Of a stretch of DNA of 64,000 bases, positions 29,601 through 54,519 are shown piece after piece. The notes under the pieces are model-generated. The model was not told the origin of the DNA. It did not search any database and worked only from the letters and a program-made list of their open reading frames with translations. Both the position numbers and the translations under genes were made by a program. Positions within the stretch are counted from its first letter, which is position 1. Each line of letters starts with the position of its first letter. Origin of the DNA: Macrostomum lignano. Its lineage: Eukaryota. The stretch is from NCBI GenBank assembly GCA_002269645.1, contig NIVC01001815.1:11739-75738 (forward strand). Direction: 5' to 3'.

Positions 29601-32600
29601 CTAGCATTCCGTCTCCAGATGATACGGTCATTGCGCTGTGCGCTGGCCACGTTAAAGGAGATGAGCTTGTGGTCAGAGAGAGACGCCACGCGAAGGACCC
29701 GCCACTCGTCAATCCTCTGGTAGAGTCTTGGTGTGGCAAGTGTGGCATCGATGACCTCCGACCAACGCCCGTTGTCGAAAGTAGGGGTGTTGCCTGAGTT
29801 GCAGAACTCAAGCGTGGTGGTGGCAACATAAGTCTGGAGGTCTTCACCTCTCTGATTAATGTTTGTGCTGCCCCAGTGAGTATGGTGAGCATTTATATCG
29901 CCAGCAACCATTAGCTCGTAGTTTCTGGCAGAACAGAGTTCCACCAGCGAGATAAGCTCTTAAGCCCCCGCGATTCTTGCGCAGCTGCGCAGAGCCGTCG
30001 GCACCACCTGGGGCCTTACCCGAAACGGCTCTGGTGGATCTATACCGCAATGGTCCGACCGGCCGTTACTTACGCAGGCCTGGTCTGGACCAGCGCCTTG
30101 CAAATTAAAACCTGCCACGAAGCCCTCAAAAAGGTGCAGGGACGTGCGTGCCGCATGATCCTGAATGCCCCGCTCTCTGCTCCCTTTGACGGCCTCAACG
30201 CCTTTCTTTGCCTCCCGCCTCTGGACATCTTTGTCCGTCGCGAGGCTGCTAAAACCACCCGCCGGCTCATCGAGGCTGGCGTTAGCTTCAAGCCACAAAG
30301 AGCGATGGCGAAGCGCAAGCTCCTGCCGCACTCTGACCTGAGCCTTAAAGTTCTGGAGGAGAGTGGGAATGCGGCTGTCCTTTCGGACGCTGAGCCGCGC
30401 TCCCTCAATCTCTACCAACGCTTCAAGGTCACTATCCCTCTAGGGAGAACGCCGACGACAGCTGGGCCCCTCAGGAGGTTCACTGCTTTACTGACGGATC
30501 CTCCAAAGACGGTTTAAAAGAGTCTGCATCCTTATCAACGGCCGCGTGATCGCTACTCACGCCCAACACACTGGCAGACTCTCCAGCGTCTTCCAGAACG
30601 AAGTCCTTGCCATCAGCTCCTGTGCAGCTGAGCTCCACTGCAGGGATTTCAAGGACAGAAGAATTTTCTTCCACTCTGACAGCCAGGCCACTTTGCAGGC
30701 CCTGTGTCACACCACTACGAACTCCCGAACAGTCCGCGACTGTATCGGGCAGCTCAGCAAGCTGGCTCGGAGGAACACCGTCCGGCTTACGTGGATCCCA
30801 GGACACGCCGGCTTCAAAGTTAATGAGCTCGCCGACTCCCTCGCTAAGGCGGGCTGTTCCGGCTCGCCCCTTGGCCCCGTGCCCCTGGCCCCCATCCCCG
30901 CCACAGTCATTAATCGTGAGATTAACGACTGGGTGGACATCCTGCACTTGCGCAGATGGGATGGTATCTCCAACTGCCGCCAATCTCGTGCGGCAGTGCC
31001 CAATCCGTCCCTCAAGCTGCGGAGAATCCTTTTGAACCAAAATCGAAAAGATATCCGCGCTCTCACTATGACCTTCACAGGTCACGGTTGCTTTGCCAGG
31101 CACTGTTTCCTCCGAAGTTCCCGCCGGAGCGAACTCTGCCATTTCTGCAACCTCGAGAACGAAGACGCCAAGCACTTCGTCTGCTACTGCCCGGCCTTCA
31201 ACCGAGACTGGCTCAACTACCTCGGGCCCAACCCGTCCCTGGACGACGTTTGCCGGCCCGAGAACATCCCACGGCTCATCCGGTTTCTCCGGGCCACCAA
31301 GCGAGCCTCCGTCTTCCCCACCGAAGACAACGCTGCAGACAGGACCGGCAGACCTCCCTGACCGGCCCCGCGCCCTAGCCTATGCGGGTTTTTCAGGGAT
31401 TAGCGGAATGGGCGACGCTCGCCTCCCTGCTGCGTCTTCGGGCCGCCCTGCAGCTAAGTCAAGTAAGTCAAGAAGAGATAAGCTCTTCCGAGACAACAGC
31501 CTTGTCTCCCGGTAAATAAACCGAGGCGATCAGGGCCGTCTTTCCCGGTAGGAGGTTTTCCGTTTGATGACGCAGAGGTCCCCATTTGAAAGGTCTCCTC
31601 TGAGCCAAGCATTGAAGGAGTTCACCACGTAGATGCAAGCTCTAGGTGGCGGTGTTCCTTCTCTTGGGCATGTGCTAAAACACTGATACCCACCGGGCAT
31701 GTGTTGGGGCTTTCCTTTAACAGTCCAAGGTTCTTGGACTAGGATGAGACCCGGCTTGTCACGCTCGGCATGCCTGATGAGGTTCACCGAAGCTGCGACG
31801 CTGTGCTGCAGATTTATCTGCAGACATTCGACCCCTGTAGCATTACTAGACATGGCTAGTTGCTCGAGGATTCGCGTAGCAGCTCCTCTTCCATCTCTTC
31901 TGAGATAGAGGGTCTGCTGACCTCCATGGGCTCCTCATAATCCACAGCGTGCGGCGCGGAGAGCGTGGTGGTGCCTGCGGCTGGCGAGAGCCTGGACCGC
32001 TTCGCTTCACCCTCCTCATCCTGTGCCGCAGCGTGGACGCTGGGGGAGTCCTGAACCGAGCTGGCGGGCAGGTCATGGTTGGCGGTGGTTTCTGCCTGAT
32101 GGCCGGATTCCTCAGCCCAGTCAGTACCCGCCGAACCATCACTTCCTGACCCACACAGCCCGGTTTGAGGAGGGTCTTTTTCGGCGCGTCGACGCTCCAG
32201 GTGTTCCAGGAGGTCGTGGGCCTGCGCCGGCGCACGCTGAACCAGACCCGACTTGCGAGTGCTGCGGGCAGGTTTTCGGCAGCACGAACTGCCTTATTAA
32301 GGTGGAGATCCACCGACCGCAGGTCTTGGGCAGCCGCGTCCTTTCCCTTGGGAGGTGCGGTGCGCTTAGTCGGCTTAGCTTCAGCCTTACCTTCCTCGCA
32401 TCGGAGGAAAGTCAGCTGATGCAGGCCGATGCAGATGGTGTTGTGCGGAACCCGCTTAGACCATTCGTCAGAGAGCCCCATGATCGCCGTAAAGCCCTCC
32501 GCACCTTTCCGGGCGGAGCCATGGCAGTAGAGCTCACTGGCGTTAAGGTCAGGGAAGCGGTTGAGCATGAGAAGCCTCAGCTGCTCCCCGGACTTGATGG

Positions 32601-35970: not shown

Positions 35971-38900
35971 ATGCGCTTGCTTCTAAGTTCACAGATTGCT
36001 AGAACTCTTCTAAGCCTATCTAGTCGCGCAATGTCGTCATCATCTTACAAAAGCCTGCTGCGTGAGAAAGCCTTTGTCAATGGCCAATGGGTGAATGCAG
36101 CCAATCGAGAGAGCTTCCCAGTCTACAATCCGGCAAATGGGGAACTTGTCTGCAAGGTGCCAGACATGGGAGCTGCTGATGCAACAGCCGCCATTGCGCA
36201 TGCTCAGGTGATTATTTGGTGTTAATATTACTTTTTTATTTTTTTATTAGAGGCAGAGGGGTTGTGTGCACCTTGGCGCACTTTAAGCGACATAGGCACG
36301 CAACCGGCGAGAGGCATTACTGCCCATTCCGCCGACTCCCCTGAGCAGGCATACAAGCATGCGGATACGTACGCAGGCACAGACTCACACAAGAGTGTAC
36401 AGCGGCCCTAACTTTATATTATCGTTAGGCATGTACACTTCACTGCGCCTTGGGGGTTGGCTCTCAAGGCCGTTAATTGCACGAGCAGAGCCAAGCCGAG
36501 ATTCCAATTCAGCCCCAAATTAATGTGACTGCACTTGGAATCGAGCCTGGGTCGCTGGCACCCCAGAGCAGCTGCGCTACCGCTGGGCTACGGCCCCCCT
36601 TTGATATTAATATTACTTCTATCTTGTACTTGAGTTGCCCTTTTGCGATAAAGTGTGACAGCTTTTCAAATTAGAAGTGACCGATTGTCAAATTAGGAGT
36701 GACAGATTCTGAAATTAAGAGTGACAGCTTGCCAAATCAGGAGTGACAGCTTGTCTAATTAGGAGTTACAGATTCTGAAATAAAGAGTAGCTTGTCAAAT
36801 CAGGAGTGACAGATTCTGAAATTAAGAGTGACAGCTTGTCAAATTAGGAGTGACAGATGGTCAAGTTAGGAGTGACAGATGGTCAAATTAGGAGTGACAG
36901 ATGGTATAATAAGGAGTGACAGATGGTCCAATTAGGAGTGACAGATGGTCAAATTAGGAGTGACAGATGGTATAATAAGGAGTGACAGATGGTCCAATTA
37001 GGAGTGACAGATGGTCAAGTTAGGAGTGAGGAACTCAAAGTGAAAACCATCAGTTAATAAATTAATGTACAAGAAAAGTCTGCAGCTTCACCCGCAGCTC
37101 GCATCTGTCACTCGGCTCCCCGCAGGTCGCATTTGAAGCCTGGCGCGGCAAGACGCCATCTCAGCGAGCTGCTCTTCTGCACAGCTGGGAGCGCCTGATC
37201 CAGGACCGCTGCGAGGACCTCGCCGCTCTCATGACCCTGGAGAACGGCAAGCCGCTCGCCGAATCTCGCGGCGAGGTCGCCTACGGTGCCTCCTTTATTC
37301 GCTGGTTCGCCGAAGAGGGCATTCGGTCACCGGCCAGACTCTGCAGGGCCCGACGCCTGACAAGCGAATTTTCACGCTCAAGCAGCCGCAGGGTGAGTCA
37401 AATCAGGCATTGCCTTCTTTGACTTGATTGGGTCAGTGTGCCTGACCTGTCATTGGGTCACTGGTGTGCCTGACCTGTCATTGGGTCACTGTCTAGTGTG
37501 CCTGACCTGTCATTGGGTCACTGTCTAGTGTGCCTGACCTGTCATTGGGTCACTGGTGTGCCTGACCTGTCACAGGGTCACTGGCGCCTTACCTAGAGCT
37601 TGACCTCCCCTGAACCCCAACCGCAGGCGTGTGCGGCATGATCACCCCGTGGAATTTCCCCGCCGCCATGATCACCCGAAAGGCTGGCGCCGCCCTCGCC
37701 GCCGGATGCACGGTGGTGATCAAGCCGGCCGAGGACACACCGCTGACGGCCCTGGCCCTGTGCCAACTGGCCGCCGACGCCCTGCTGCCGCCAGGTGCCC
37801 TCAATGTGGTCACGTGCTCGCGAAGCCGAGCTGCCGAAGTTGGCCGAGTTCTGACCACCGACCCGGCCGTGAAGCACGTGAGCTTCACCGGCAGCACGGA
37901 CACGGGCAAGCTGCTGCTGGCACAGGCCTCCAGTACGGTGAAGCGAGTCACCATGGAGCTCGGCGGCAATGCTCCGTTTATTGTGTTCGATTCGGCCGAT
38001 GTTGACAAGGCTGTGAGATTTTTTGGGGGGGGGGGGGAAGGGGTGTTCTTCTTCACACAAACTCAAATCTTCACACAAGCTCAAATCTTCACACAAACTC
38101 AAATCTTCATAAAAAGCTCAAATCTTCACACAAGCTCGAATCTTCACACAAGCTCTAATTTTCACACAAACTCTAATCTTAACACAAATTCTAATCTTCA
38201 CACAAACTCAAATCTTCACACAAAAATCTTTACACAAGCTCAAATCTTCACACAATCTCAAATCTTCACACAAGCTCGAAACTTCCACCATCTCTGCAAT
38301 GTTTACACTGTTTTCAAGTATGTATAACTTGTCAAAGACGGAAAAAACTATAATTCTTTTGTTTACTTCGTATCAAATGTCAAGTTATCACTGCCTGAAC
38401 AAATTTAGTTCTAGCAAAACATTTCCCCCTATTCACCGCAGGTGGCAGGCCTCATTCAGGCCAAATTTCGCAACACGGGCCAGACTTGCGTTTGTCCCAA
38501 CCGGATTTTCTTGCAGCGCCGCGTTAGCCAAAAGTTTCTGGCTAAGCTGTGCGAACGGGTTGCCGAAATGAAAGTTGGCGATGGCTTCGAGGTTTGTTGG
38601 CTGTTGGGTTGCTGGGGAATTGCCTCAAGTGCTCACGGCCTCATGAGGAAGCAATTTAGCACAAGCAATCAAGGAGAATTTGATAAGGGGTCAGAGGGGG
38701 AATTGCACAAGCGGTCAGAGGGGGGAATCGCACAAGCGGTCAGAGGGAGGAATTGCACCAACCCCTCCCCCAACCGTGCAGGCGGGCACTCAACTGGGCC
38801 CGCTGATCAACGCGGCCGCCGAGTCGAAGCTGGAGCGGCTCCTGGCTGACGCCAAGCAGCGCGGCGGCCGGGTGCTCGCCGGCGGCCAGTCGGTGAAGGT

Positions 38901-39276
38901 CGGCAGCGGCGCCGGCCACTTTTTCCAGCCGACGGTGGTGTCGGGCCTGGGCCGCGACTCCGCCTGCTTTCGCGAGGAGATTTTCGGCCCGCTTGTTGCC
39001 GCGTTCGAGTTCGACAGCGAGGCGGATGTTGTCGAACTGGCGAACGACTGTCGAGTGGGGCTGGCCGGTTATTTCTACTCGGCCGATGTCGGACAGTGCT
39101 GGCGAGTGGCGGAGCAGCTCAATGTTGGCATGGTCGGGGTCAACGAGTCCATGGTGAGCTCCTGCATCGCCCCGTTCGGAGGCTGGAACGAGTCGGGGCT
39201 GGGCAGCGAGTCCGGCGTGGGCTACGGCATCGAGGAGTACCTCAACCTCAAGACTGTCGTGCTGAACTTGGCTTAA
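35971..39276 (+). CDS. ALDH5A1: Succinate-semialdehyde dehydrogenase, mitochondrial; exons 35971-36207, 37126-37392 (1-bp frameshift near 37325), 37627-38012, 38442-38591, 38782-39276
   Basis: Transit-peptide-like N-terminus followed by [70 protein letters not shown], catalytic [19 protein letters not shown] and APFGG. All introns are GT-AG. The missing G restores [24 protein letters not shown]. Confidence 0.93.
36234..36600 (-). mobile_element. tRNA-derived SINE, full-length copy 2, in ALDH5A1 intron 1, with target-site duplication
   Basis: Near-identical to 9853-10213; flanked by TTAATATTACTT at 36222-36233 and 36607-36618 (extends to 19 bp with 2 mismatches). Confidence 0.88.
36680..37030. 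repeat. About 21-bp minisatellite in ALDH5A1 intron 1
   Basis: Unit AATTAGGAGTGACAGATGGTC and variants. Confidence 0.9.
37435..37585. repeat. 28-32-bp minisatellite in ALDH5A1 intron 2
   Basis: Unit GTGTGCCTGACCTGTCATTGGGTCACTG(TCTA), 5 copies. Confidence 0.9.
38048..38285. repeat. 18-bp minisatellite in ALDH5A1 intron 3
   Basis: Unit CTTCACACAAGCTCAAAT with variants. Confidence 0.9.
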
Positions 39277-39722: not shown

Positions 39723-40351
39723 CAATGGTAAGGTTAGAGTTCGTTGAACCAAAATAATGAACGAAAGTTAAAAATAAAATTGAATCATAAGGTGACGTCA
39801 TCTGTATTTGTTTCTATAAATAGATGGGTGTGCAAACTTTCGCGCATTTTAATTTCCTATTGGCTGGCCCTGGAGGCAGCGGGTTGATTTCAACTGTTAT
39901 TGCACTTTGTTGATAAACAATCGCTACAGACTGCTGTTAGTAGACATGTTAGCTTTTTATGTAATATTTCTATCCAACTGTAGTACTTGGTTGTTTTGTT
40001 GCGGACAACTTCATTTTCACCGCTCCTTACTTAGTTGAATCGTTGAATTTTCTTTATTACGTAATAAGTTTGATTCTGTCGTGTTCCGCCTTTTGTTGAT
40101 TCCCCAGACAGCCACCATTCGCAATAAAGCGCCCTTCTTAATCCATTTATTTAGATTTTGAATCATTTTCGAAGTTCGAAATTATATTTAAATAAAATAA
40201 TAATATTATTTTAAGATTATGCTTTTCCTTAATCAATTTGAATCACATTAAATAATGGCTTTGATTTATCTCAATGGTTTTTCGTGCATCCCAAATGCTG
40301 TGAAATGCGAACAATATGTTTAAATCAAAAACACTAACCTACGGTTCTAAA

Positions 40352-40585
40352 TCCCAATCCAGAATCCCAATCTAGAATCCCCATCCAGAATCCCCATCCA
40401 GAATCCCCATCCAGAATCCCCATCCAGAATCCCAATCCAGAATCCCCATCCAGAATCCCCATCCAGAATCCCCATCCAGAATCCCCATCCAGAATCCCAA
40501 TCCAGAATCCTAATCCAGAATCCCAATCCAGAATCCCAATCTACAATCCCAATTCAGAATCCCAATCCAGAATCCCAACCTAGCA
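40352..40585. repeat. 13-bp minisatellite
   Basis: Unit ATCCAGAATCCC(C/A). Confidence 0.94.
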
Positions 40586-40907
40586 TCCCAAACCCAGAGC
40601 TAAAATTTAAACTCAGAATCTCAAATATATATTAAGACGCAACTCGCTGGCTCAGCCATGGACGGCTAATTAACATGGATACTTGATAAGAAAATCGGCC
40701 AAAGAGATTCCAGAAGAATGAATACCAAAGGCACGGTAAGTTTTTGTAGCCCTCTATTTTAGTCTATGGCTAAAAGTGTCCCTGAGGAGCCAGAGCTCTC
40801 AATCTGCAGCCAGATGTGAATTAATCAGCGATTGGCAACGCAAAACGGCCGACAGGAACTCCCTCAGTGTGCAGCCATTTTTATTAGACTGAAACAGCTG
40901 AAGTGCC

Positions 40908-41366
40908 ATGGCAGCAATGTTCGAGCCGGACTACTGCGGCCCTGTCGACGACCTCCAGGAGCATCGGCAGCAGCTGCAGTCGGACAGCGTCAACTGGAAG
41001 GACTGCATCCACCGGTGGAAGCGAAGCCGGGAGAAGTGGCGCAGGGAGGCGCTCAGCCTTCAGCAGCAGACTTTCGAGGCGGCGCGCAGCGCCAGCCACT
41101 GGCGGGAGCGTAGCGGCCTGACGCAGGCGGAGCTGCGCAAAGCGCGGGAGCAGCTGACTGACTGGCATCGGGAGACGCAGCGCTGCAGAGAGGCGGCCAG
41201 GCAGTGGAAATGCGAAGCGGTCAGGTGGCGCGAGATGGCGAGAGCCTGGAAGCGGCAGTGCTGCGACCTGCTGGAGCAGAAGGACGATCAGCAGATTGCT
41301 CAGCTGAGCCAGGCTCGGCAGAGGCACTGCGCCGAGTTGCGGCAGCCATACGCATCGACCTGGTGA
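40908..41366 (+). CDS. Orphan 152-aa Trp-rich coiled-coil protein, single coding exon
   Basis: GC-rich third positions like the other genes here; GCCATGG start context with an in-frame upstream stop; upstream donor at 40736 and acceptors at 40887/40897; AT-rich flanks. No family recognised. Confidence 0.7.
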   Translation: MAAMFEPDYCGPVDDLQEHRQQLQSDSVNWKDCIHRWKRSREKWRREALSLQQQTFEAARSASHWRERSGLTQAELRKAREQLTDWHRETQRCREAARQWKCEAVRWREMARAWKRQCCDLLEQKDDQQIAQLSQARQRHCAELRQPYASTW

Positions 41367-41636
41367 CCCGCGCAGGCGTTCGCCCGTTTTTTAAATCTCG
41401 TATAAAAATGCGTCTTTTGATCAGTTGGGTTTGAACAAATTTTTTTCACTGGTAATTTTGCAACCGCAAATACACGACTACGGGAAGTGGACTGTTCATG
41501 GTCCAAGTTTTTTTTGCTTTTTTTCTCAATGCTCTGCGAGCTTTTGCTGATTAAACTTTGACTTTAAAGTGCGAATTCAATTCTTCTTTTGCCAAATTTT
41601 GGCAGAAATTTGACAGAAATTTTTGTGTCGAACTAA

Positions 41637-42190
41637 AACCATCCTCACTTCCACCTCACTGCAATACCCACCTCACTCCTGCACCCACCTCACTCCTGCA
41701 CCCACCTCACTCCTGCACCCACCTCACTCCTGCACCCACCTCACTTCTGCACCCACCTCACTTCTGCACCCACCTCACTCCTGCACCCACCTCACTCCTG
41801 CACCCACCTCACTCCTGCACCCACCTCACTCCTGCACCCACCTCACTTCTGCACCCACCTCACTCCTGCACCCACCTCACTCCTGCACCCACCTCACTTC
41901 TGCACCCACCTCACTCCTGCACCCACCTCACTCCTGCACCCACCTCACTTCTGCACCCACCTCACTCCTGCACCCACCTCACTCCTGCACCCACCTCACT
42001 CCTGCACCCACCTCACTTCTGCACCCACCTCACTCCTGCACCCACCTCACTCCTGCACCCACCTCACTCCTGCACCCTCCTCACTCCTGCACCCACCTCA
42101 CTCCTGCACCCACCTCACTCCTGCACCCACCTCATTTCTGCACTCACCTCACTCCTGCACCCAACTCACTCTGCAGCCTCCTCTTTACTG
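41637..42190. repeat. 17-bp minisatellite
   Basis: Unit CACCCACCTCACTCCTG. Confidence 0.96.
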
Positions 42191-43084: not shown

Positions 43085-43958
43085 GTGGTGAGTGAGGTGG
43101 CTGTTAAGTGAGGTGGCTGTGAAGTGAGGTAGATATGAAATGATGTGGATATGGAGCGAGGTGGCTGTGGAGCGAGGTGGCTGTGGAGTGAGGTGGCTGT
43201 GGAGTGAGGTGGCTGTGGAGTGAGGTGGCTGTGGAGTGAGGTGCCTGTGGAGTGAGGTGGATGCGGAATGAGGTGGATATGGAGCGAGGTGGCTGTGGAG
43301 TGAGGTGGGTGTGGAGTGAGGTGGCTGTTAAGTGAGGTGGATGTGGAATGAGTTGGATATGGAATGATGTGGATATGGAGCGAGGTGGCTGTGGAGTGAG
43401 GTGGGTGTGGAGTGAGGTGGCTGTGGAGCGAGGTGGCTATGGAGTGAGGTGGCTGTGGAGTGAGGTAGATATGGAATGATGTGGATATGGAGCGAGGTGG
43501 CTGTGGAGTGAGGTGGCTGTGGAGTGAGGTGGCTGTGGAGTGAGGTGGATATGGAATGATGTGGATATGGAGTGAGGTGGCTGTGTAGTGAGGTGGCTGT
43601 GGAGTGAGGTGGCTGTTAAGTGAGGTGGCTGTGAAGTGAGGTGGCTGTGGAGTGAGGTGGATATGAAGTGAGGTGGCTGTGGAGTGAGGTGGATATGAAG
43701 TGAGGTGGCTGTGGAGTGAGGTGGCTGTGGAGCGAGGTGGCTGTGGAGCGAGGTGGCTATGGAGTGAGGTGGCTGTGGAGTGAGGTAGATATGGAATGAT
43801 GTGGATATGGAGTGAGGTGGCTGTGTAGTGAGGTGGCTGTGGAGTGAGGTGGCTGTTAAGTGAGGTGGCTGTGAAGTGAGGTGGCTGTGAAGTGAGGTGG
43901 CTGTGGAGTGAGGTGGATATGAAGTGAGGTGGCTGTGGAGTGAGGTGGCTGTTAAGTG
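43085..43958. repeat. Degenerate 16-bp minisatellite
   Basis: Unit GGAGTGAGGTGGCTGT with variants. Confidence 0.95.
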
Positions 43959-44464
43959 AAGACTCCTGTTTAATGAAGAGTAGGGCAACTATTACAAAGC
44001 CTATTTGTCCATTTTTCTCGGTATCGTCACTTCCTTGAGCAGGTCTCAGTGCATACTTGTTATTCCGATTAGGTAAACTGCATGACCGGTAGCCCACTTC
44101 ATACTTGGAACTGGTATACAAGTGAACAGAATGCATTGGATGCTCTTGGATAAATGGCCATGTCGAATCGATGGAAATTAATTTACTGTCTGGGATTTCT
44201 TGCCCAATTGGGTCTTAGGAGCTGCGAGCCGCGGAGGCAATCAGAGACTCAATTGTTGTCAAATGCTCTCTGATGTGACACAACCTCTTCAATTTAATTC
44301 GACTCACTCGGGCAATACATTCCCCAACTCTGCTGATGATCATGGCCGGTTTGTTGACCCTGTTATTATGCCCTCTCGGACATTACTTGAGCGTCTTGCT
44401 TGCAGGTTGATAGATTGATAAAATAAAGGTGCTCGCCTAGACTTAAAGGTATAAACTTTTTTCT

Positions 44465-44850
44465 CAATGTCACTCCTTCACCAAAATCATCAATGTCACT
44501 CCCTCACTCGGGTCCTCAATGTCACTCCCTCACTCGGGTCCTCAATGTCACTCCCTCACTCGGGTCCTCAATTTCACTCCCTCACTCGGGTCCTCAATTT
44601 CACTCCCTCACTCTGGTCCTCAATTTCACTCCCTCGCCCAGATCCTCAATGTCACTCCCTCACCCAGATCCTCAATGTCACTCCCTCACCCAGATCCTCA
44701 ATGCCACTCCCTCACCCAGATCCTCAATGTCACTCCCTCAGCCAGATCCTCAATGTCACTCCCTCAGCCAGATCCTCAATGTCACTCCCTCACCCAGATC
44801 CTCAATGCCACTCCCTCACCCAGATCCTCAATGTCACTCCCTCAGCCAAT
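44465..44850. repeat. 26-bp minisatellite
   Basis: Unit TCAATGTCACTCCCTCACCCAGATCC; 5' copies carry CTCGGGTCC. Confidence 0.94.
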
Positions 44851-45440: not shown

Positions 45441-46092
45441 AATGGATTGCTAACCTAGCCAACATCACGGATACAGGAATAGAATGGATTGCTAATCTAG
45501 CCGACATCACGGATACAGGAATAGAATGGATTGCTAACCTAGCCGACATCACGGATGCAGGAATTAAATGGATTGCTAATCTAGCCAATATCACGGATGC
45601 AGGAATGGAATGGATTGCTATTCTAGCCGACATCACGGATACAGGAATAGAATGGATTGCTAATCTAGCCGACATCACGGATACAGGAATAGAATGGATT
45701 GCTAATCTAGCCGACATCACGGATGCAGGAATGGAATGGATTGCTAACCTAGCCGACATCACGGATGCAGGAATGGAATGGATTGCTAACCTAGCCGACA
45801 TCACGGATGCAGGAATTAAATGGATTGCTATTCTAGCCAATATCACGGATGCAGGAATGGAATGGATTGCTATTCTAGCCGACATCACGGATGCAGGAAT
45901 AGAATGGATTGCTAATCTAGCCGACATCACGGATGCAGGAATAGAATGGATTGCTAATCTAGCCGACATCACGGATGCAGGAATTAAATGGATTGCTAAT
46001 CTAGCCAACACCACGGATGCAGGAATAGAATGGATTGCTAATCTAGCCAACACCACGGATGCAGGAATAGAATGGATTGCTAATTTGGCTAG
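45441..46092. repeat. 42-bp minisatellite, about 15 copies
   Basis: Unit ATGGATTGCTAATCTAGCCGACATCACGGATGCAGGAATAGA. Confidence 0.95.
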
Positions 46093-46595: not shown

Positions 46596-47889
46596 AATTT
46601 ATGGCTTAATAAATTTATCATAATCTCATTAATAAGTTCTAAAATCATGAGTTCATGACTGAAACCGAGTCAATTAGTGAGTTTATCAGTTTACGGGAGA
46701 GCTGATTAATTAGACTGAGTTTCATTAGTTCATGAGTGAGGTCATAAATTAAAGAATTAAAAAAATAAATATTACAGTTTGATCGCAGGTGAGTTCACGA
46801 ATGTGTGTGTGAGTCATTTTTCTATGAACTTGGACAAGTAAAACAAACAGATTCTCCCAGATGCCTCACGCTTCATCAACACACGTCTCCAAACTGCTCG
46901 GCTGGAGTGCTTCTGCTTTGAGCACTGCTCATCTCAAAGGCAGCAAAGGCCCCATAGCCTGAGCGCGGGTTTCCTTTGATTTAGTCCCGCGCTGGGCCAA
47001 AAATATCATTAGCCTGCTCCCCCAGACAGTCTCAGCTTCATCATCAATTTTTGTGCAAGCGGGCGATCTTTAATCCTCAGCTCAAAATCCCCAGTTGCCC
47101 GCCCGGACCCTCTGCCATCTCAAGAATTTCCTGAATCATCTTCATCTTGAAAAAATCGGAGGAGGGGGACTTAAAAAAATGGCTTCCCCCACCCTCAGCG
47201 GGGGGTCTCGCGCACCTGGGGAAGCTGGGGCAGGGAAAACGCCAAGCCGATCGATCCGCCATTTCTTCGCCAAAAATAATTTATTTGCCAATGGGTTCTG
47301 CTCAGTTAGAAAAAAGTGAGAATGAGAAGAAAGAGGAGGAGGAGAGGTAAAAAGTCCAAGCCCGGGCTACCAGCTGCCGCCCGCCTGAGGGTCACTTCGC
47401 GAGGGCCTGTCGGGGCTCCTGATCCAGCCTCTTAGATGAGGAAGAAGTGAGGACGGCAGCAGATGGGGGTGCAAAGTGAGGAATTTGAAACAAGACAGGC
47501 TGGCCGCTTTGAGATCAAGAAAGAGTTGGCTGGTCCCGCGTCTCGTGCTCAGCTAGCTGCATCAAGTTGCAGCAAGTGAGAGATGGCATGTGGATTCTGG
47601 GTGACCTGGCTCTCGGCTTCAGTCCAGCTTCATTTCTTGCCGGCAAAGTGCTAGTAGTTGCTCACTCACTCTCCAACTCACTTTCACTCACTTTCTCCAG
47701 CATTCACTGAATCTCTCACTCATTCACTTGTCGGGGCATCACAAACCCGAAATATCACAAACCCAAATTATAACTCCAAAAGTGCTAGCAATGTCCAACG
47801 CTATTCTGGTTTTCGGGGGTTATGATATTTCGGGTTTATGATGGCGACCTATTCACTTATCTCTTATTCCCCAGGGACTTTTTTATATT

Positions 47890-49390
47890 ATCACCAATTC
47901 ACTCACTCTCTCACCAATTCACTCACTCTCTCTCACCAATTCACTCACTCTCTCACCAATTCACCCACTCTCTCACCAATTCACCCACTCTCTCACCAAT
48001 TCACTCACTCTCTCACCAATTCACTCCCTCTCTCACCAATTCAACCACTCTCTCACCAATTCACCCACTCTCTCACCAATTCACTCACTCTCTCACCAAT
48101 TCACCCACTGTCTCACCAATTCACTCACTGTCTCAACAATTCACCCACTGTCTCACCAATTCACCCACTGTCTCACCAATTCACCCACTCTCTCACCAAT
48201 TCACCCACTGTCTCACCAATTCACCCACTGTCTCACCAATTCACTCACTGTCTCACCAATTCACCCACTCTCTCACCAATTCACCCACTGTCTCACCAAT
48301 TCACTCACTCTCTCACTAATTCACCCACTCTCTCACCAATTCACTCACTCTCTCACCAATTCACTCACTCTCTCACCAATTCACTCCTCACTCTCTCACC
48401 AATTCACTCACTCTCTCACCAATTCATCCACTCTCTCACCAATTCACCCACTCTCTCACCAATTCACTCACTGTCTCACCAATTCACCCACTGTCTCACC
48501 AATTCAACCACTCTCTCACCAATTCACCCACTCTCTCACCAATTCACTCACTCTCTCACCAATTCACCCACTGTCTCACCAATTCACTCACTGTCTCAAC
48601 AATTCACTCACTCTCTCACCAATTCACTCACTCTCTCACCAATTCACCCACTCTCTCACCAATTCACTCACTCTCTCACCAATTCACCCACTCTCTCACC
48701 AATTCACTCACTCTCTCACCAATTCACTCCTCACTCTCTCACCAATTCACTCACTCTCTCACCAATTCATCCACTCTCTCACCAATTCACCCACTCTCTC
48801 ACCAATTCACTCACTCTCTCACCAATTCACTCCCTCTCTCACCAATTCAACCACTCTCTCACCAATTCACCCACTCTCTCACCAATTCACTCACTCTCTC
48901 ACCAATTCACCCACTGTCTCACCAATTCACTCACTGTCTCAACAATTCACCCACTGTCTCACCAATTCACCCACTGTCTCACCAATTCACCCACTCTCTC
49001 ACCAATTCACTCACTCTCTCACCAATTCACTCACTCTCTCACCAATTCACTCACTCTCTCACCAATTCACCCACTCTCTCACCAATTCACTCACTCTCTC
49101 ACCAATTCACTCACTCTCTCACCAATTCACCCACTCTCTCACCAATTCACTCACTCTCTCACCAATTCACTCACTGTCTCACCAATTCACCCACTGTCTC
49201 ACCAATTCACCCACTGTCTCACCAATTCACCCACTCTCTCACCAATTCACCCACTGTCTCACCAATTCACCCACTGTCTCACCAATTCACTCACTGTCTC
49301 ACCAGTTCACTCACTCTCTCACCAATTCACTCACTCTCTCACGAATTCACCCACTCTCTCACCAATTCACTCTCTCTCTTACCAATTCAA
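47890..49390. repeat. 20-bp pyrimidine-rich minisatellite, about 75 copies
   Basis: Unit CACCAATTCAC(T/C)CACT(C/G)TCT. Confidence 0.97.
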
Positions 49391-49609
49391 TTACCTTTTC
49401 TCTCCTTTTATCACTTTGTCATCTCGCTTCCCTATTAGTCCATTTTCCACCCACTTGTCAAATGCGAAGCCCTCAGACAATTGTGAAACTGTAACAAAGG
49501 AGATCCACAGGGGATTTGTTTGCTTCCGGATTGACTACAAAACCAGAGGCCAAGCAAAGAAGGCAGCCAGAATAATAAGATATGAATCGCGGCAAGTCGA
49601 GCAGATCCT

Positions 49610-49775
49610 ATTGGCCAATCTGTCAGCCAATCAGCGGCGTAGACATGTTTCTTTTAGAAGAAGTAGCTTGCAACGCGGTGAGAGGTGAATTAGCTGAGAG
49701 CCAGGCCAGCAGGGCATAAGAAAAAAGCAGATAACATACCAATGGCAACGCCACAGCTCGGCCTATTAAATTAGG
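49610..49775 (+). promoter_or_regulatory. Possible protocadherin core promoter (two CCAAT boxes and a TATA-like TATTAAA)
   Basis: GGCCAATC and AGCCAATC at about 49613-49632; TATTAAA at about 49764, some 30 nt before ATG 49797. Motif-only evidence. Confidence 0.3.
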
Positions 49776-49796: not shown

Positions 49797-52700
49797 ATGC
49801 CCGCCAAGCAGCAGAGCCGCCTCGCCAGCGTCCACCTGCTCCTGGTGCTGCTGGCGACGCCGGCCTCCGCTCAGGCGGACGTCGGCATCAGCATCAGCCT
49901 GGGTGACAACGTGAACTTCAAAACGCTGGTCGGCCAGCTGTACACCCTCGACAGCCGCCTGCCGCCGCCGCCCTACCAGTCCGCCCGCCTGGAGCCGCAA
50001 TCAAAGAGCCCGGACAACCTGTTCACCGTGGACCGGCAGGGCGCCATCTCCGCCAACCGCGACGTGGACCGAGACGAGCTCTGCGGCCTCCTGGACTGCT
50101 GCGAGAAGTCCGACTGCGTCCTGGACTATCAACTCGAGCTGCGGGCGGCGCCGGGCTCCCGGCCGATCCTTCGCCTGCTGCGCATTGTCCTGAACGACGA
50201 GAACGACCAGCCGCCTGCGTTCCGCAGCATGCAGCCAATCGACGTGCCCGAGGACGCCAACGGGACGGTGATCGACCTGCCCGCGGCGGAGGACCGCGAC
50301 TCGCCCGCGTTCGGCGTGGCCAACTACAGCCTGGAGGACCCCAGCGGCACCTTCGCGCTGGTGGACACGTCCGGGGCCGGGCAGCCGCGTCTGCGCCTGA
50401 CGAAACCGCTGGACCGCGAGCGGCAGCCGCAGTACCAGATCACCCTGCGCGCCACCGACGGCCTCCGAACTGGCGCCGTGGTCATCACCGTCCGAGTCGG
50501 CGACGTCAATGACAACGCACCAGTCTTCAATACGCCGACGCAGACGCTGGAGATCCCGGAAAACTGGCCAGTCGGCGATAGGCTCACGACGCTCTCGGTA
50601 GACGATCAGGACGACGGCGCCAACGCCGAGCTCCACCTGAAGATTGTCGCCGTAACACCGTCGGAACTCGCTGGCCATTTCGAGGTGCTAAAAAAAGGGG
50701 CCTCCACCTGGGACCTCCACCTGCGCCGCCAGCTGGACTTTGAGCGGCCGGAGCAGCGCAGCGCCGTGGTGCTGATCGAGGCTCGGGACTCCGGTACCCC
50801 GGTACGTTCGGCCAGCGCCACCGTCACCGTCAACGTCAAAGACGTAAACGACAATCCGCCGATTATCGAGCAGTTGGCTGTGTACGACCTGTACGAGCAC
50901 AGGAGCGAAGGCGAGCTCATCATGACGCTGAAGGTGGTTGCTCAACTTTGACATGGGTCGACATGAGTATGGGGGGGGGGCGGCGAGACATAGCAGATAG
51001 AGCTCAGTACTGCTACTTTCTGTACCCTTCGAGAGACCCTGACAGTTTTTGTAAGACATCTTGTACTCTTTGAGAGGTCCGGACAGTCTATGTAGAACAT
51101 ATTGTACTCTTCGAGGGGGGCCCCGATAGTCCTCGGGTAAGGCCAAGACACGGGCAGGCCGTAGCGGCTTTGCCAAGTCTTTATAAAAACTGTTGGTCAC
51201 TAAAATTTTCTAACTCTCCATCCAACTCGTAGGTGACTGACGTAGACTCGGTGTCCCGTGGCAAGGTGACCTGCAAGCTACAGTCTAACCCAATGTTCAG
51301 TCTGAAAATATCTGACAACAACAACGCCGAGCGACAGTCGTCAGAGGCGACCACCTACAACTTATACAGCGCCACTCGCTTCGACTTCGAAGTGTCGCAG
51401 AACGTCTCCGTCGAGATCAGCTGCATGGACTCGGCCCAGCCAGTGCAGCCGGCCATCCGGCGGTTTGTAATTCCGATCCGGGAGACCAACGACTTCGCGC
51501 CGGCCTTCCCCCAGAGAAGCTACTTCGCCCAGGTGTCCGAGAGCCTGGCCTCTGGCCTCTCCGTGCTGACCGTGCAGGCGGTTGACAAGGACAAGGGCGA
51601 GAGCGGCCTGCTGTCCTACCGCCTGGACGCGGCTGGGAAGCAATTTTTCCGCATCGGTCAGCGCTCAGGCAATATCGAGCTGCTTCCCGGCGCCAGACTC
51701 GATCGCGAGCTCCAGCCAAGCCTGACGTTCCAAGTGATCGCTGAGGACTCCGGACATCCGTCGCAAAGCGCCTCCGCCTCCGTCATTGTCATCTTGTTGG
51801 ACGAAAACGACAACGCGCCGGCCTACGTGGGCCCGCCGGTCATGAGCGTGTCCGAGGACAGCTCGGTGGGTGCCCAGATCGGCCGCGTTGCGTTTCAAGA
51901 CCCGGACAAGGACGAGAACGGCACAGTTCGATTCAACCTGTTGCCAGGCCGGTACGTGCACAATGAGTACCTGCGCCTGAACGCTTCAACTGGAGCTCTG
52001 CTGCTGAAAGCTAAACTGGACCGGGAGCAGCAGCCGCGGTTGCTGGTGCTGCTGGGGGCCTCGGATCTCGGCAAGCCGCCTCGCTCGGCCACCGCCAGCT
52101 TGCAGATCGAGGTGCTGGACGTAAACGACAATGCCCCCGTGTTCACCGCGCCGCTGCCCGGCCAGATCATTGGAAGCGGTGTCCGCGACGGAGCAACTGG
52201 CAGCGAGGCGCAGTCTGCTGTCGCCACTCGGCTGCTCTACACGAACCTGCCCGAACGGTCCCTGGTGATTGAGGCGGTGGCCGCCGACCTTGACGCTGGC
52301 GACAACGGCACGGTGAGCTTCGGCCTGCGTCCGGGAACCAACGGCAGCCGGCTGTTCGGCGTGGATCCTGTCAAAGGCGAGCTGCACACTCTCTGGAAGC
52401 CGGACGACCCGTTAGGACCGCCGCAACCTGGCGTCTACGCTCTGACCCTGGTGGCCACCGATGGCGGCCTGCCCCGGCGCCTCTCCGGCAGCGTCACCTT
52501 CTACGTCCGGCTGACCGCGCCGCCCGGGTCGATGCACCGGTTCGGCGCTGCTGGCGCTGGCGGCGTCGCCATCCTGATCGTCATCATCGCGGCCACCGTG
52601 CTGATCGCGGCTGGCCTGGTGGCGGCCATCTTCTACGTGCGGGCTAAGTCTGCCGATGTCGCCTCGACTGGCGGCGTCGTTAGCGACGCACGCTTAGCAA

Positions 52701-52885
52701 CCGGCGACAGGCTGGCGAGGTCCAAGACACACGGCAGCGGCGGCGGCGGCGGCGGCGTTGTGGACGGCGGAGACGGCAACGGAGACGACTGCGGCGCTGA
52801 CGCGGACGCTGACACCGTCGGCGTGGCGGGCGACTTCTCCGTGGCCGGCTGGTCGCTCGGCCGGCCATCCGGGTCGCCAGCTGCG
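49797..52885 (+). CDS. Protocadherin (signal peptide, 7 cadherin repeats, TM, start of cytoplasmic tail); exons 49797-50933 and 51233-52885
   Basis: EC1 has DRDELC..C. Six DxND-type linkers (DENDQPP, DVNDNAP, DVNDNPP, ETNDFAP, DENDNAP, DVNDNAP) are followed by a seventh repeat. TM segment GVAILIVIIAATVLIAAGLVAAIFYV. Phase-0 intron 50934-51232; probable phase-0 donor GCG|GTGAGC after 52885. Confidence 0.93.
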
Positions 52886-54519
52886 GTGAGCGGATTTTTA
52901 GCATGAAAAATTGAGCAAGATTTTGTTTTACTAGGAGCGGTCAGGTCTTATTTCGACAATATACCGAATTGCGGGCGCCTCCCTCGCAATGAAGCCAAAT
53001 GCCCGGCTCCATCAGTTTCGGGTGTCACTAATCGGTACTATGTTCGGCTATGACTCGGGGTCGTTGGATGTGAGGGCATCGTCACACAGCCCAGACTTTC
53101 ATACAGTGCACCGATGCTTGGGTACCAAATGCACCTGTGCGCTGTTTACCTAGCTAGTGCTTTGATTTCAACTGGCGGTTGTTTCTAACTGTTGCTGGAA
53201 GTAGGTAAACCTAAGATCGGCTGAGAGGATTTCAAAGAGTCTCCGGTGATTCTTCAAAATCCGGTGCCTAAAGCCTGTCTTTGCTTTAGCTTGTAGAGAC
53301 TCTCGCGAGGGAGTGGGACAAGAAAAAAACGAGGGGGGAACCGAGTGGACGGGAAAAGTGAGATGGGGAAGAAGAGATTTTGAAATCCGATACAGGGCGG
53401 TGAGTGCGGTAGGGACGGGCCTTATCCCTCCCCAGCAGCCCAGTAGCCACATCCAGTGCTCCGATTAGAGATAACAATATGCGACGGGGCTGGCGGCGGC
53501 TAAGCACCTCCGCCTTGCAAGGGGTGAGGGGGGCTGGGATGGCAGGCCATTAGCAATGGCTGGTTCCATCTCATCTCCCACCCCCGTGCCTTGCCTGTAA
53601 TCCCTCATCCCATTGTCTTCTGTTTTATACTTTCCTTTCCCTTGTGCCCGTATCCAAATCTTGCAAAAATGGGAACAATGTAACAGTTGGTCGGAGCTGT
53701 CATGGCGTGGTTCAATACTTTTTTCCTGACATATTTCCTCGGAACAACACGCTAAAGCAGTGGATTTGAGCCGATCCATCCCACAATATAGCTAAAATGT
53801 AGACGAGTATATTGAGCTCGTGACAAGCTGCCCGATGAAGCTGTGCAGTTTGGGGAAGCTGGCTGGACCAGAGAGTGAATTAATTGATTTTTCTACCTAG
53901 CGCAGCTTCGTCATCGCTTGCCTTCCGTTCCGCTTCAAGTCAGATCGATTCGCAAATCCTATTGGCAATGGTCTGCTTCTGCTCTTGCTTTTGTATTTCT
54001 TCGTCTTCTTGAGTTGGTTTAAAAATTTATTTATCTGCAACGAGGACTCCTGTGTTCCTAGCTATATTGTTGCATAACAGCCGCTTGTTGCACACACTGG
54101 ACACATCAAAGTGAGGCTCTTTGTGTCTCATCAACAAGCAAAGCTAGTTTCAGCAAACACGTGCTACCCTTAATTAAAACTATATATGACTATGAAAAAC
54201 AATGTAACAAGTAGCAGCAAGCAGGACAGGCGTCCAACACAGAACGCAGAGGTTCCAACCTTGATGTAAAAAGCTATCGATCGATCAATCTCCCTCGCTA
54301 GTATACGGACCTGGCCGAGCCAAAGGTGGATGGATGCTTCCCAAAGACTCTATCGCTTCTCTGGACGGGCGGGGCTGACTGGCGGAGCGTGAAGGTGTCA
54401 GAGGCAGCAAAGGGTGTCCCGCATTGTGAGGGCTGGCTGGTCTCTTTGCCTCGGAACCTTAGCGCTCTCTTCTGCTCTGTGCGTGTGTGGGTGTAAATTC
54501 GCTTCACTTCTCATAGCAG

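What the first reader, a model, noticed from the sequence alone, without database searches (positions are those of the whole stretch)
40908..41366. Orphan protein with a natural tryptophan-zipper heptad pattern
Seen: all eight internal Trp (W30, 37, 44, 65, 86, 100, 107, 114) lie in one heptad position, and Y9, L16, L23, L51, C93 and L121 share that register over about 16 unbroken heptads. The rest is rich in R/E/Q/K with several Cys. Known: Trp at coiled-coil core positions is rare in nature, and a designed Trp-zipper forms a pentamer with a central channel. Inference: an unusual high-order coiled coil (structural, secretory or germline protein), perhaps lineage-specific.
Basis: partly seen in the sequence, partly recalled or inferred. 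Interest (0 to 1): 0.7.

Follow-up and report, generated by a model that had tools for sequence, protein, structure and literature searches.

The report
Flatworm coiled coil with tryptophan core
A real, conserved gene of the flatworm Macrostomum lignano encodes a small protein predicted to be one long helix with tryptophan at the same core position in eight of about thirteen heptads; this design is rare in nature, its nearest known look-alike is the tetramerisation peptide of cholinesterases, and its function is untested.

Summary
ORF 40908-41366 (+) encodes 152 aa, and W30, 37, 44, 65, 86, 100, 107 and 114 share one heptad register (2 of 200,000 shuffles do as well). The window is Macrostomum lignano contig NIVC01001815.1.

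The gene is real. It is called in a transcript-derived annotation. It has four paralogues in the same genome, each with all eight Trp invariant. dN/dS is 0.16-0.34 with saturated dS. Only this reading frame stays open across paralogues.

Nothing related exists outside M. lignano in two very large protein libraries. AlphaFold2 gives one 95-residue helix (aa 30-124) for two family members.

The family heptad table is canonical:
- a = Ala/Leu
- d = Trp/Leu/Met
- e = Arg/Lys
- g = Glu/Gln/Ser
- b and f are variable

Charges favour a parallel, in-register coiled coil. There is no signal peptide.

The best Pfam and PDB matches, both sub-threshold, are to the cholinesterase WAT peptide. WAT is a natural W-x6-W-x6-W helix whose four copies wrap a polyproline helix, so natural precedent exists. 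Strand number, partner, tissue and function remain open.

Verdict: a lineage-restricted, unusual variant of a known fold, of moderate interest.

The parts
40886..40887 (+). Candidate 3' splice acceptor (tttttattAG|ac) 20 nt upstream of the ATG. It could serve cis-splicing, with a GTAAGT donor candidate at 40736-40741, or spliced-leader trans-splicing.
   Evidence: Read from the sequence. Inference only. The near-identical second copy is named ...g2, meaning the second gene cut out of a transcriptional unit. The published trans-splice acceptor motif is [T/C]TNCAG (PMC8629364), which this site matches only in its AG.
40899..40901 (+). In-frame TGA stop upstream of the start codon. It fixes ATG 40908 as the first possible start in this exon.
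   Evidence: Read from the sequence. The start context is gccATGg.
40908..41366 (+). Coding sequence, single exon, 152 aa plus TGA. The protein is 18.5 kDa with pI 9.1, 9 Trp and 7 Cys.
   Evidence: It is called as a gene in GCA_002269645.1. GC by codon position is 0.64/0.49/0.86. dN/dS to paralogues is 0.23-0.32 by NG86. It is the only frame open in all paralogues.
40908..40991 (+). N-terminal variable region, aa 1-28. It has low predicted order and length variation between paralogues. It contains one conserved Cys (C10) and no signal-peptide-like hydrophobic stretch.
   Evidence: pLDDT is 40-58. The alignment has gaps here.
40995..41279 (+). One uninterrupted alpha-helix, aa 30-124, about 95 residues. 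It carries the heptad pattern a = Ala/Leu, d = Trp/Leu/Met, e = Arg/Lys, g = Glu/Gln/Ser.
   Evidence: AlphaFold2 gives helix 30-124 with block pLDDT 87-96. Paralogue P0002 gives the same helix at 15-109 with pLDDT 92-97.
40995..41039 (+). First Trp triad: W30, W37 and W44 within NWKDCIHRWKRSREKW. This is the most conserved stretch of the family.
   Evidence: Residues 29-45 are nearly invariant in five paralogues. Pfam AChE_tetra reports a second, weaker stretch in the protein.
41187..41267 (+). Second Trp triad and WAT-like block, aa 94-120 (REAARQWKCEAVRWREMARAWKRQCCD). It is followed by the invariant core Cys118.
   Evidence: Pfam PF08674 matches aa 95-117 at 19 bits, E = 0.0012, against a cut-off of 25. 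A PDB profile search puts 1VZJ on top at E = 0.046 with 12/24 identical. hhalign gives 38.6% probability. A shuffle test on the non-Trp residues gives P about 1e-4.
41280..41363 (+). C-terminal tail, aa 125-152. The helix breaks at K125-D126, then a second short helix (127-149) carries the conserved DDQQIAQL motif, C141 and Y148. The heptad register of the Trp stripe ends here.
41401..41406 (+). TATAAA, a candidate variant polyadenylation signal 35 nt after the stop codon.
   Evidence: Read from the sequence. Inference only.

Best explanation
This is a real, expressed gene restricted to Macrostomum. It encodes a small, basic, cysteine-containing protein without a signal peptide, so it is probably intracellular.

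Residues 30-124 form one rigid helix about 14 nm long. The helix most likely self-associates, or associates with its paralogues, as a parallel, in-register coiled coil of few strands (two to four).

How the interface is built:
- The seam is one stripe of Trp/Leu/Met at heptad position d, alternating with small Ala/Leu at position a. The mean core volume is therefore close to that of a leucine zipper.
- Conserved Arg/Lys at e and Glu/Gln at g flank the seam and provide inter-helix salt bridges: E75-R80', E89-R94' and E103-R108'.
- The invariant Cys118 sits in the core (position a) just after the last Trp layer. Conserved Cys also lie near both ends. These could staple the strands covalently or bind metal.

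The assembled rod would act as a structural or scaffolding element.

Shown: the gene is real and conserved; the heptad chemistry; the single long helix as a prediction. Inferred: oligomerisation, orientation, strand number, cysteine cross-links and cellular role.
For: Gene reality:
- The gene is called in the GenBank annotation of Mlig_3_7. That annotation was built only from RNA-seq-derived transcripts plus TransDecoder (PMC5730564).
- There are four further paralogue groups at 1-4 loci each.
- dN/dS is 0.16-0.34 with dS above 1, and DNA similarity between paralogous loci stops at the CDS borders.
- Only the + frame is open in all paralogues, and GC3 is 0.86.

Helix: AlphaFold2 gives a single helix 30-124 for the window protein (pLDDT 87-96) and the equivalent 15-109 for P0002 (pLDDT 92-97).

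Coiled-coil chemistry, with conservation as mean majority fraction:
- a = A25/L13 of 65 residues, 0.80
- d = W40/L10/M5 of 69, 0.86
- e = R27/K20 of 69, 0.86
- g = Q19/E17/S12 of 69, 0.73
- b and f are variable, 0.51 and 0.59. Together with the values above, this is the conservation gradient expected of an a/d/e/g interface.

Orientation: parallel in-register pairing gives 2-3 attractive and 0 repulsive g-e' pairs in every paralogue. Every antiparallel register of the window protein has 1-4 repulsive and 0 attractive e-e' pairs.
Against: - No oligomer was modelled or measured. The structure tool folds single chains only.
- Trp-Trp layers at d of a two-strand parallel coil are sterically demanding. 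Trp facing Ala would pack more evenly in an antiparallel pair, so sterics and charges point in different directions.
- Only three charged g-e' pairs occur over 13 heptads, which is modest support for parallel.
- The alignment behind the AlphaFold models is shallow (3-5 sequences).
- Expression is inferred from the annotation method, not seen directly.
- Tissue and function are unknown.
- Many cysteines in a protein without a signal peptide are not explained by a plain cytosolic coiled coil.
Confidence: 0.55

Rival explanations
1. WAT-like mode. The Trp triads do not pack against each other. Several parallel helices wrap as a superhelix around a proline-rich (polyproline II) segment of another protein, with Trp rings stacking on Pro rings. 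This is how four cholinesterase WAT peptides wrap the PRAD of ColQ or PRiMA. The protein would then be a free-standing oligomeriser or adaptor for a Pro-rich partner, with two docking sites (aa 30-44 and 100-114) on one rod.
For: - The top Pfam hit is PF08674 AChE_tetra (E = 0.0012, two stretches).
- The top PDB profile hit is 1VZJ, the WAT/PRAD complex (E = 0.046; 12 of 24 identical, EA.RQWK.E..RW......WK.Q).
- hhalign gives P = 3e-4 over 27 columns at 44% identity.
- Similarity of the non-Trp residues exceeds shuffles at P about 1e-4, and holds for all five paralogues at P below 0.05.
- WAT helices are parallel and assemble around an antiparallel PPII helix by hydrophobic stacking (PMC8518539; bioRxiv 10.1101/431288). 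The charge pattern here also favours parallel.
- A Cys follows the last Trp, as in WAT.
Against: - All scores are below family thresholds: 19 against 25 bits, and hhalign probability 38.6%.
- The other conserved WAT aromatics (F14, Y20, F28) are Ala, Met or Gln, and Cys here.
- WAT works in the secretory pathway, attached to a catalytic domain. This protein has neither a signal peptide nor any other domain.
- The first triad resembles WAT no better than chance (P = 0.04-0.14).
- No Pro-rich partner is known.
- Shared constraints could produce the resemblance by convergence: a parallel coil with a basic e position and an acidic g position.
Confidence: 0.17
2. Surface-binding amphipathic helix. 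The helix stays monomeric and lays its Trp stripe, flanked on both sides by Arg/Lys (the motif [R/K/H/Q]-W-[K/R/H]), on a membrane interface or along nucleic acid, for example sperm chromatin or RNA. Arg/Trp-rich peptides behave this way.
For: - Every Trp is followed by a basic residue, and often preceded by one.
- pI is 9.1-10.4 in four of the five paralogues.
- Trp prefers membrane interfaces and stacks on bases (general knowledge).
- A small, basic, Cys-rich protein is reminiscent of sperm nuclear or structural proteins (general knowledge).
Against: - The a position is conserved as small and hydrophobic, and g as acidic or polar with conserved E-R pairing. A one-sided surface binder has no need for this.
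- One paralogue is neutral (pI 7.15).
- A 95-residue straight amphipathic helix lying on a membrane is unusual.
- There is no direct evidence for lipid or nucleic-acid binding.
Confidence: 0.12
3. Not a functional protein. It would be a chance ORF in GC-rich DNA, or the true gene would be the 147-aa ORF on the opposite strand (40884-41327).
For: - The antisense frame is open across the whole CDS in the window.
- A second genomic copy carries a frameshift, and one paralogue carries a premature stop.
- No expression table entry was found.
Against: - dN/dS is 0.16-0.34 at dS above 1.
- Eight invariant single-codon Trp persist across five paralogues.
- The antisense frame has 1-3 stops in three of the five paralogues.
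- GC3 of 0.86 fits the + frame.
- The annotation is transcript-derived.
- The frameshift lies in a GGG run of a PacBio assembly. The copy otherwise differs inside the CDS by only one change, which is synonymous.
Confidence: 0.03

Closest known systems
WAT (tryptophan amphiphilic tetramerisation) peptide of acetyl- and butyrylcholinesterase, Pfam PF08674, PDB 1VZJ
   Same: - Three Trp at seven-residue spacing on one face of an amphipathic helix.
- The same flanking residues, EA.RQWK.E..RW......WK.Q, with 12/24 identical.
- A basic residue after each Trp.
- Parallel helices.
- A Cys C-terminal to the last Trp.
- It is the only natural Trp-heptad oligomerisation module that the searches brought up.
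   Different: - WAT is a 40-residue tail on a secreted alpha/beta-hydrolase. This is a free-standing 152-aa protein without a signal peptide.
- Here the Trp stripe runs over 13 heptads with two triads.
- The large aromatics that widen the WAT hydrophobic face (F14, Y20, F28) are replaced by Ala, Met or Gln, and Cys.
- Scores are below the family cut-off (19 against 25 bits; hhalign 38.6%).
- No polyproline partner is known.
Designed tryptophan-zipper pentamer (Liu et al. 2004, PDB 1T8Z; cited in PMC4619341)
   Same: Trp occupies coiled-coil core positions over many consecutive heptads.
   Different: - The design has Trp at both a and d (my own knowledge). Here only d is Trp, and a is mostly Ala.
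- Here the e and g positions are charged or polar.
- There is no sequence similarity. 1T8Z is absent from the PDB hits at E up to 10.
- Nothing here indicates a pentamer or a channel.
Ordinary parallel leucine-zipper-type coiled coils with g-e' salt bridges
   Same: - A canonical a/d hydrophobic seam.
- Basic e and acidic g positions.
- An unbroken heptad register.
- A single long helix per chain.
   Different: The core alternates very large (Trp) and very small (Ala) layers in place of Leu/Ile/Val. Trp is the rarest residue at coiled-coil core positions (general knowledge). The protein also has many Cys.

Membership tests
Cholinesterase WAT domain (Pfam PF08674 AChE_tetra) | The sequence scores at or above the Pfam gathering cut-off (25 bits). 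| tested here: not met
   The score is 19 bits at E = 0.0012. Only 2 of 3 members tested match at all. hhalign probability is 38.6%.
Cholinesterase WAT domain (Pfam PF08674 AChE_tetra) | Three Trp spaced by seven residues on an amphipathic helix. | tested here: met
   W100/107/114 and W30/37/44 are invariant in five paralogues.
Cholinesterase WAT domain (Pfam PF08674 AChE_tetra) | Further conserved aromatic residues (F14, Y20, F28 of the 40-mer) that widen the hydrophobic face. | tested here: not met
   The aligned residues are A104, M110 (Q or E in the paralogues) and C118.
Cholinesterase WAT domain (Pfam PF08674 AChE_tetra) | It forms the C-terminal tail of a cholinesterase catalytic (alpha/beta-hydrolase) domain in a secreted protein. 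| tested here: not met
   This is a stand-alone 152-aa ORF with an in-frame stop 9 nt before the ATG. Pfam finds no other domain. No N-terminus in the family has a hydrophobic signal-like segment. This was read directly; no signal-peptide predictor was run.
Cholinesterase WAT domain (Pfam PF08674 AChE_tetra) | A Cys near the C-terminus forms inter-subunit disulfides. | tested here: inconclusive
   The invariant C118 lies 4 residues after the last Trp, at core position a. Disulfide formation cannot be tested here.
Cholinesterase WAT domain (Pfam PF08674 AChE_tetra) | Four helices assemble around a polyproline II (PRAD) peptide. | not testable with these tools
   No multimer or complex prediction is available. 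The property is described in PMC8518539 and bioRxiv 10.1101/431288.
Designed Trp-zipper pentamer (PDB 1T8Z) | Trp at both the a and d core positions. | tested here: not met
   d is Trp in 8 of 14 heptads. a is A/L/T/I/C and never Trp.
Designed Trp-zipper pentamer (PDB 1T8Z) | A five-strand assembly with a central channel. | not testable with these tools
   Indirect evidence argues against it. The e and g positions are charged or polar (e = 68% Arg/Lys), whereas known helical barrels need hydrophobic or small e/g residues (general knowledge).
Canonical left-handed coiled coil | An unbroken heptad repeat with hydrophobic a and d positions on a continuous helix. | tested here: met
   See the heptad table. 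There are no gaps in aa 29-119 across the five paralogues (from 120 the truncated P0003 is missing). AlphaFold2 gives a single helix 30-124 in two members.
Canonical left-handed coiled coil | Interface positions (a, d, e, g) are more conserved than outer positions (b, c, f), with complementary e/g charges. | tested here: met
   Conservation of a/d/e/g is 0.80/0.86/0.86/0.73, against 0.51 for b and 0.59 for f. There are 2-3 attractive and 0 repulsive g-e' pairs.
Canonical left-handed coiled coil | Actual oligomerisation in solution. | not testable with these tools
   This needs SEC-MALS, analytical ultracentrifugation or a structure.
Single alpha-helix (SAH) domain | An E/K/R-rich helix without a hydrophobic seam. 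| tested here: not met
   A conserved Trp/Leu/Met plus Ala/Leu seam is present.

The most novel reading that the evidence does not exclude
The family is a free-standing relative or convergent copy of the cholinesterase WAT module without a signal peptide. Its parallel Trp-lined helices would enclose a guest in place of a closed core, either a polyproline II segment of a partner protein or a small hydrophobic ligand. Each 14-nm rod would carry two such docking triads. That would be the first WAT-type Trp/Pro superhelical assembly outside cholinesterases and outside the secretory pathway.
Probability: 0.15. Interest if true: 0.7.

Novelty: new variant of a known kind. Interest (0 to 1): 0.45.

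Why it matters
Rules that link coiled-coil sequence to strand number and orientation come almost entirely from Leu/Ile/Val cores. A natural, selected core of alternating Trp and Ala layers would be a new data point for those rules and for protein design. It runs over 13 heptads and is conserved through paralogue divergence with saturated synonymous change. Eight stacked indoles per chain also give a built-in fluorescence and CD probe.

If the resemblance to the cholinesterase WAT peptide is more than convergence, the Trp-around-polyproline assembly principle would extend beyond one enzyme family.

For flatworm biology this is one more lineage-restricted gene family in an organism where RNAi and transgenesis are established, so its role can be tested directly. 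If it turns out to be a plain dimeric rod, the finding is a curiosity of composition and nothing more.

Tried and rejected
Searches that found nothing useful:
- Homologue searches found only M. lignano family members. These were three word-indexed searches of 5.8 billion proteins and one full HMMER profile search of 1.84 billion representatives. The only outside hit was a Trp-free, generic repeat-rich coiled-coil protein (P0005, E = 4e-4), which I rejected as compositional.
- A scan of JGI metagenome contigs for relatives found none.
- Foldseek of the model against the PDB gave no match, as expected for a lone helix.
- The single-sequence PDB hits to designed TIM barrels (HalluTIM, sTIM11) were rejected as matches to W/K/R/E-rich designed helices.
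- The Pfam hits BicD and CCDC113 are generic coiled-coil noise below their cut-offs.

Expression data:
- The family's gene ids occur in no main text.
- They occur in none of the held supplements of PMC5730564, PMC7336406, PMC12896417 and PMC5816591. No supplements are held for 10.1101/167346 or PMC10786194.
- Mlig-sperm1 (Mlig020950) was checked as a possible identity and is a different family.

Hypotheses considered and rejected:
- The antisense ORF as the real gene.
- A helical-hairpin fold. AlphaFold gives a straight helix, and G70 is not conserved.
- Origin from a recent tandem DNA repeat.
- Other copies in the window. There are none.

Papers not held: Dvir 2004 (PMC526459) and Liu 2004 (PMC528954).

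Full report
**What is at the coordinates**

Window 40908-41366 (+) is an ATG-to-TGA ORF of 152 codons. An in-frame TGA lies at 40899-40901, so ATG 40908 (context gccATGg) is the first usable start in this exon. A possible splice acceptor (tttttattAG) ends at 40887, and a GTAAGT donor candidate lies at 40736-40741. Both splice sites are my reading of the sequence and are not shown by data.

The protein has Trp at 30, 37, 44, 65, 86, 100, 107 and 114, all in one heptad register, plus a terminal W152 out of register. Only 2 of 200,000 shuffles of the protein place 8 or more of the 9 Trp in one register. Tandem Repeats Finder sees no DNA repeat inside the ORF, so the periodicity is not a young 21-bp array.

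**Where it comes from, and whether it is a gene**

The exact protein is encoded on NIVC01001815.1 of GCA_002269645.1, the Mlig_3_7 assembly of the flatworm Macrostomum lignano, and is called as a gene there. That annotation was built solely from RNA-seq-derived transcripts (StringTie/TACO plus a de novo transcriptome, then TransDecoder; PMC5730564). A gene call is therefore indirect evidence of transcription.

Searches of 5.8 billion proteins and a full HMMER profile search of 1.84 billion cluster representatives return only M. lignano proteins:
- P0001: 143 aa, four loci
- P0002: 136 aa, three loci
- P0003: 118 aa, two loci
- P0006: 156 aa, one locus
- P0004: 70 aa

(Locus counts.)

P0004 is the window gene's twin on NIVC01000342.1. 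The CDS is identical except that the GGG run at 41104-41106 has one G fewer, plus one synonymous change at 41201. This is either a homopolymer error of the long-read assembly or a very young pseudogene.

Between paralogues, dN/dS is 0.16-0.34 (NG86) with dS of 1.3-2.1. Nucleotide similarity between paralogous loci is confined to the CDS. The sense frame is the only one open in all paralogues. The antisense ORF 40884-41327 has stops in three of the five. GC3 is 0.86 against GC2 of 0.49. The ORF is a real gene under purifying selection, and it belongs to a small family not seen outside this species in the searched data. A metagenome scan also found nothing. Other Macrostomum genomes could not be searched with these tools.

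**Anatomy of the protein**

All eight in-register Trp are invariant in the five full-length paralogues. Residues 29-119 align without a single gap; beyond that, P0003 is truncated.

AlphaFold2 predicts one uninterrupted helix, 30-124, with block pLDDT 87-96. The N-terminal 28 residues have low confidence. The helix breaks at K125-D126, and a second helix runs 127-149. Paralogue P0002 gives the same picture: helix 15-109 with pLDDT 92-97, a break, then helix 112-132. Neither prediction folds back on itself.

Setting Trp as position d, the family-wide heptad table reads:

| Position | Residues | Conservation (mean majority fraction) |
|---|---|---|
| a | Ala 25, Leu 13, Thr, Cys, Ile of 65 | 0.80 |
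| d | Trp 40, Leu 10, Met 5 of 69 | 0.86 |
| e | Arg 27, Lys 20 of 69 | 0.86 |
| g | Gln 19, Glu 17, Ser 12 | 0.73 |
| c | mostly basic | 0.73 |
| b | variable | 0.51 |
| f | variable | 0.59 |

This is the textbook signature of a coiled-coil interface, with two oddities. The d layer is Trp, and the a layer is mostly Ala. Summing standard residue volumes (general knowledge), a Trp layer plus an Ala layer fills about the same space as two Leu layers, so a closed core is plausible.

**Orientation and strand number**

For a parallel in-register assembly, the g(i)-e'(i+5) pairs give 2-3 attractive contacts (E75-R80, E89-R94, E103-R108) and no repulsive contact in every paralogue. For the window protein, every antiparallel register gives 1-4 repulsive and no attractive e-e' pairs, and at most one attractive g-g' pair. 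Charges therefore favour parallel.

Sterically, Trp facing Ala would suit an antiparallel pair, so orientation is favoured but not settled.

The e and g positions are strongly polar. Known five-or-more-helix barrels need small or hydrophobic e/g residues (general knowledge).

C118 is invariant, sits at core position a directly after the last Trp layer, and could form an inter-chain disulfide. C33 (position g) is invariant. One Cys is found within the first 10 residues of each paralogue. C141 is conserved in the four members that keep the tail.

None of the five N-termini has a signal-like hydrophobic segment, so a secreted role is unlikely. pI is 9.1-10.4 in four members and 7.15 in one.

**Comparison with what is known**

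The best Pfam match is PF08674 (AChE_tetra), the tryptophan amphiphilic tetramerisation (WAT) peptide of cholinesterases. It aligns to aa 95-117 at E = 0.0012 and 19 bits, below the 25-bit cut-off.

A profile of the family searched against all PDB sequences puts 1VZJ, the WAT/PRAD complex, first. E is 0.046, and 12 of 24 residues are identical in the pattern EA.RQWK.E..RW......WK.Q.

Profile-profile comparison with three WAT sequences gives P = 3e-4 and probability 38.6% over 27 columns. Residues 5-28 of the first row agree with the tool's print-out.

With the three Trp held fixed, the similarity of the remaining residues of the C-terminal triad exceeds shuffles at P about 1e-4. For the N-terminal triad it does not (P = 0.04-0.14).

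In cholinesterases, four parallel WAT helices form a left-handed superhelix around an antiparallel polyproline II helix supplied by ColQ, PRiMA or other Pro-rich proteins. Binding is by hydrophobic stacking and hydrogen bonds (PMC8518539; bioRxiv 10.1101/431288).

Membership in the WAT family is not established:
- The score threshold is not met.
- The extra WAT aromatics (F14, Y20, F28) are Ala, Met or Gln, and Cys here.
- There is no catalytic domain and no secretory signal.

The resemblance may be homology through an old exon, or convergence under the same constraints. I could not decide between these.

The designed Trp-zipper pentamer (PDB 1T8Z; cited in PMC4619341) has Trp at both a and d (own knowledge). 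It shows no sequence similarity to this protein.

**Most likely mechanism**

I commit to a parallel, in-register, few-strand coiled-coil rod about 14 nm long. It would be held by a Trp/Ala seam and E-R salt bridges, possibly stapled through Cys118. It could be a homo-oligomer or a mix of paralogues, since the paralogues share the same core and e/g pattern. It would act as a structural or scaffolding element without a signal peptide, so probably inside cells. Confidence is 0.55.

Rivals:
- A WAT-like wrap around a Pro-rich guest: 0.17.
- A monomeric Arg/Trp amphipathic helix binding membrane or nucleic acid: 0.12.
- A non-functional ORF: 0.03.

The remaining probability covers arrangements I have not thought of.

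**What could not be done**

No multimer prediction is available. No expression data were found: the family's gene ids are absent from all searched texts and held supplements. The known testis gene Mlig-sperm1 is a different family. Other Macrostomum genomes could not be searched.

**Verdict**

The coiled-coil reading is supported, and the pentamer, secretory and germline readings are not. This is a lineage-restricted, compositionally unusual variant of a known fold, with an intriguing sub-threshold likeness to the cholinesterase WAT peptide. Interest is moderate (0.45). It would rise if the assembly proves to be WAT-like or of high order.

Noticed in passing
window 41104-41106, compared with L009 (NIVC01000342.1) 10197-10199: A second, 99.5%-identical genomic copy of the gene has GG where the window has GGG. 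The frame shifts after codon 66, and the copy is annotated as a 70-aa protein (P0004, BOX15_Mlig033173g2). The only other CDS difference is synonymous (AGG to AGA at 41201). This is either a long-read homopolymer error or a very young pseudogene in this neopolyploid genome.
   Followed up: partly
L011 6355-6453 and L012 6355-6453 (paralogue P0003): Paralogue P0003 ends at a TAG that replaces the codon aligned to window residue 120. The next 31 codons still read the family's conserved tail in frame (LMDRKDDRQIGLMC...). Both genomic copies carry the stop. This is a recent truncation that removes the second helix.
   Followed up: partly
window 40350-40591, 41651-42183, 43090-43952, 44463-44848, 45441-46084, 47891-49389: The gene lies in a field of minisatellites, with units of 13, 17, 16, 26, 42 and 20 bp and up to 75 copies. 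The 16-bp unit contains the reverse complement of 11 nt of the 17-bp unit, which gives opposite GC skew on either side of 42.2-43.1 kb. The 20-bp array creates a spurious 616-aa ORF (47838-49688). Copy numbers differ between the two genomic copies of the region.
   Followed up: partly
window 37629-39276 (+): Exons of an aldehyde dehydrogenase gene (Pfam PF00171, E down to 1.5e-50) end about 1.6 kb upstream on the same strand. On the twin contig the Trp-protein gene is named '...g2', meaning the second gene of a transcriptional unit. The two genes may therefore be co-transcribed and separated by trans-splicing. An 18-bp tandem array (38050-38285) lies inside the dehydrogenase gene.
   Followed up: partly
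window 1674-3732 (-), 30546-31361 (+), 49797-52906 (+): Other coding pieces in the window are TMEM117 exons (E = 1e-94), an RNase H fragment that is probably a retroelement remnant (E = 6e-8), and cadherin-repeat exons (E = 4e-43).
   Followed up: no
window 40884-41327 (-): A 147-aa ORF runs antisense through almost the whole gene. It is also open at the P0006 locus but carries 1-3 stops at the other three paralogues. It is a by-product of the GC-rich, stop-poor codon usage and not a gene.
   Followed up: yes
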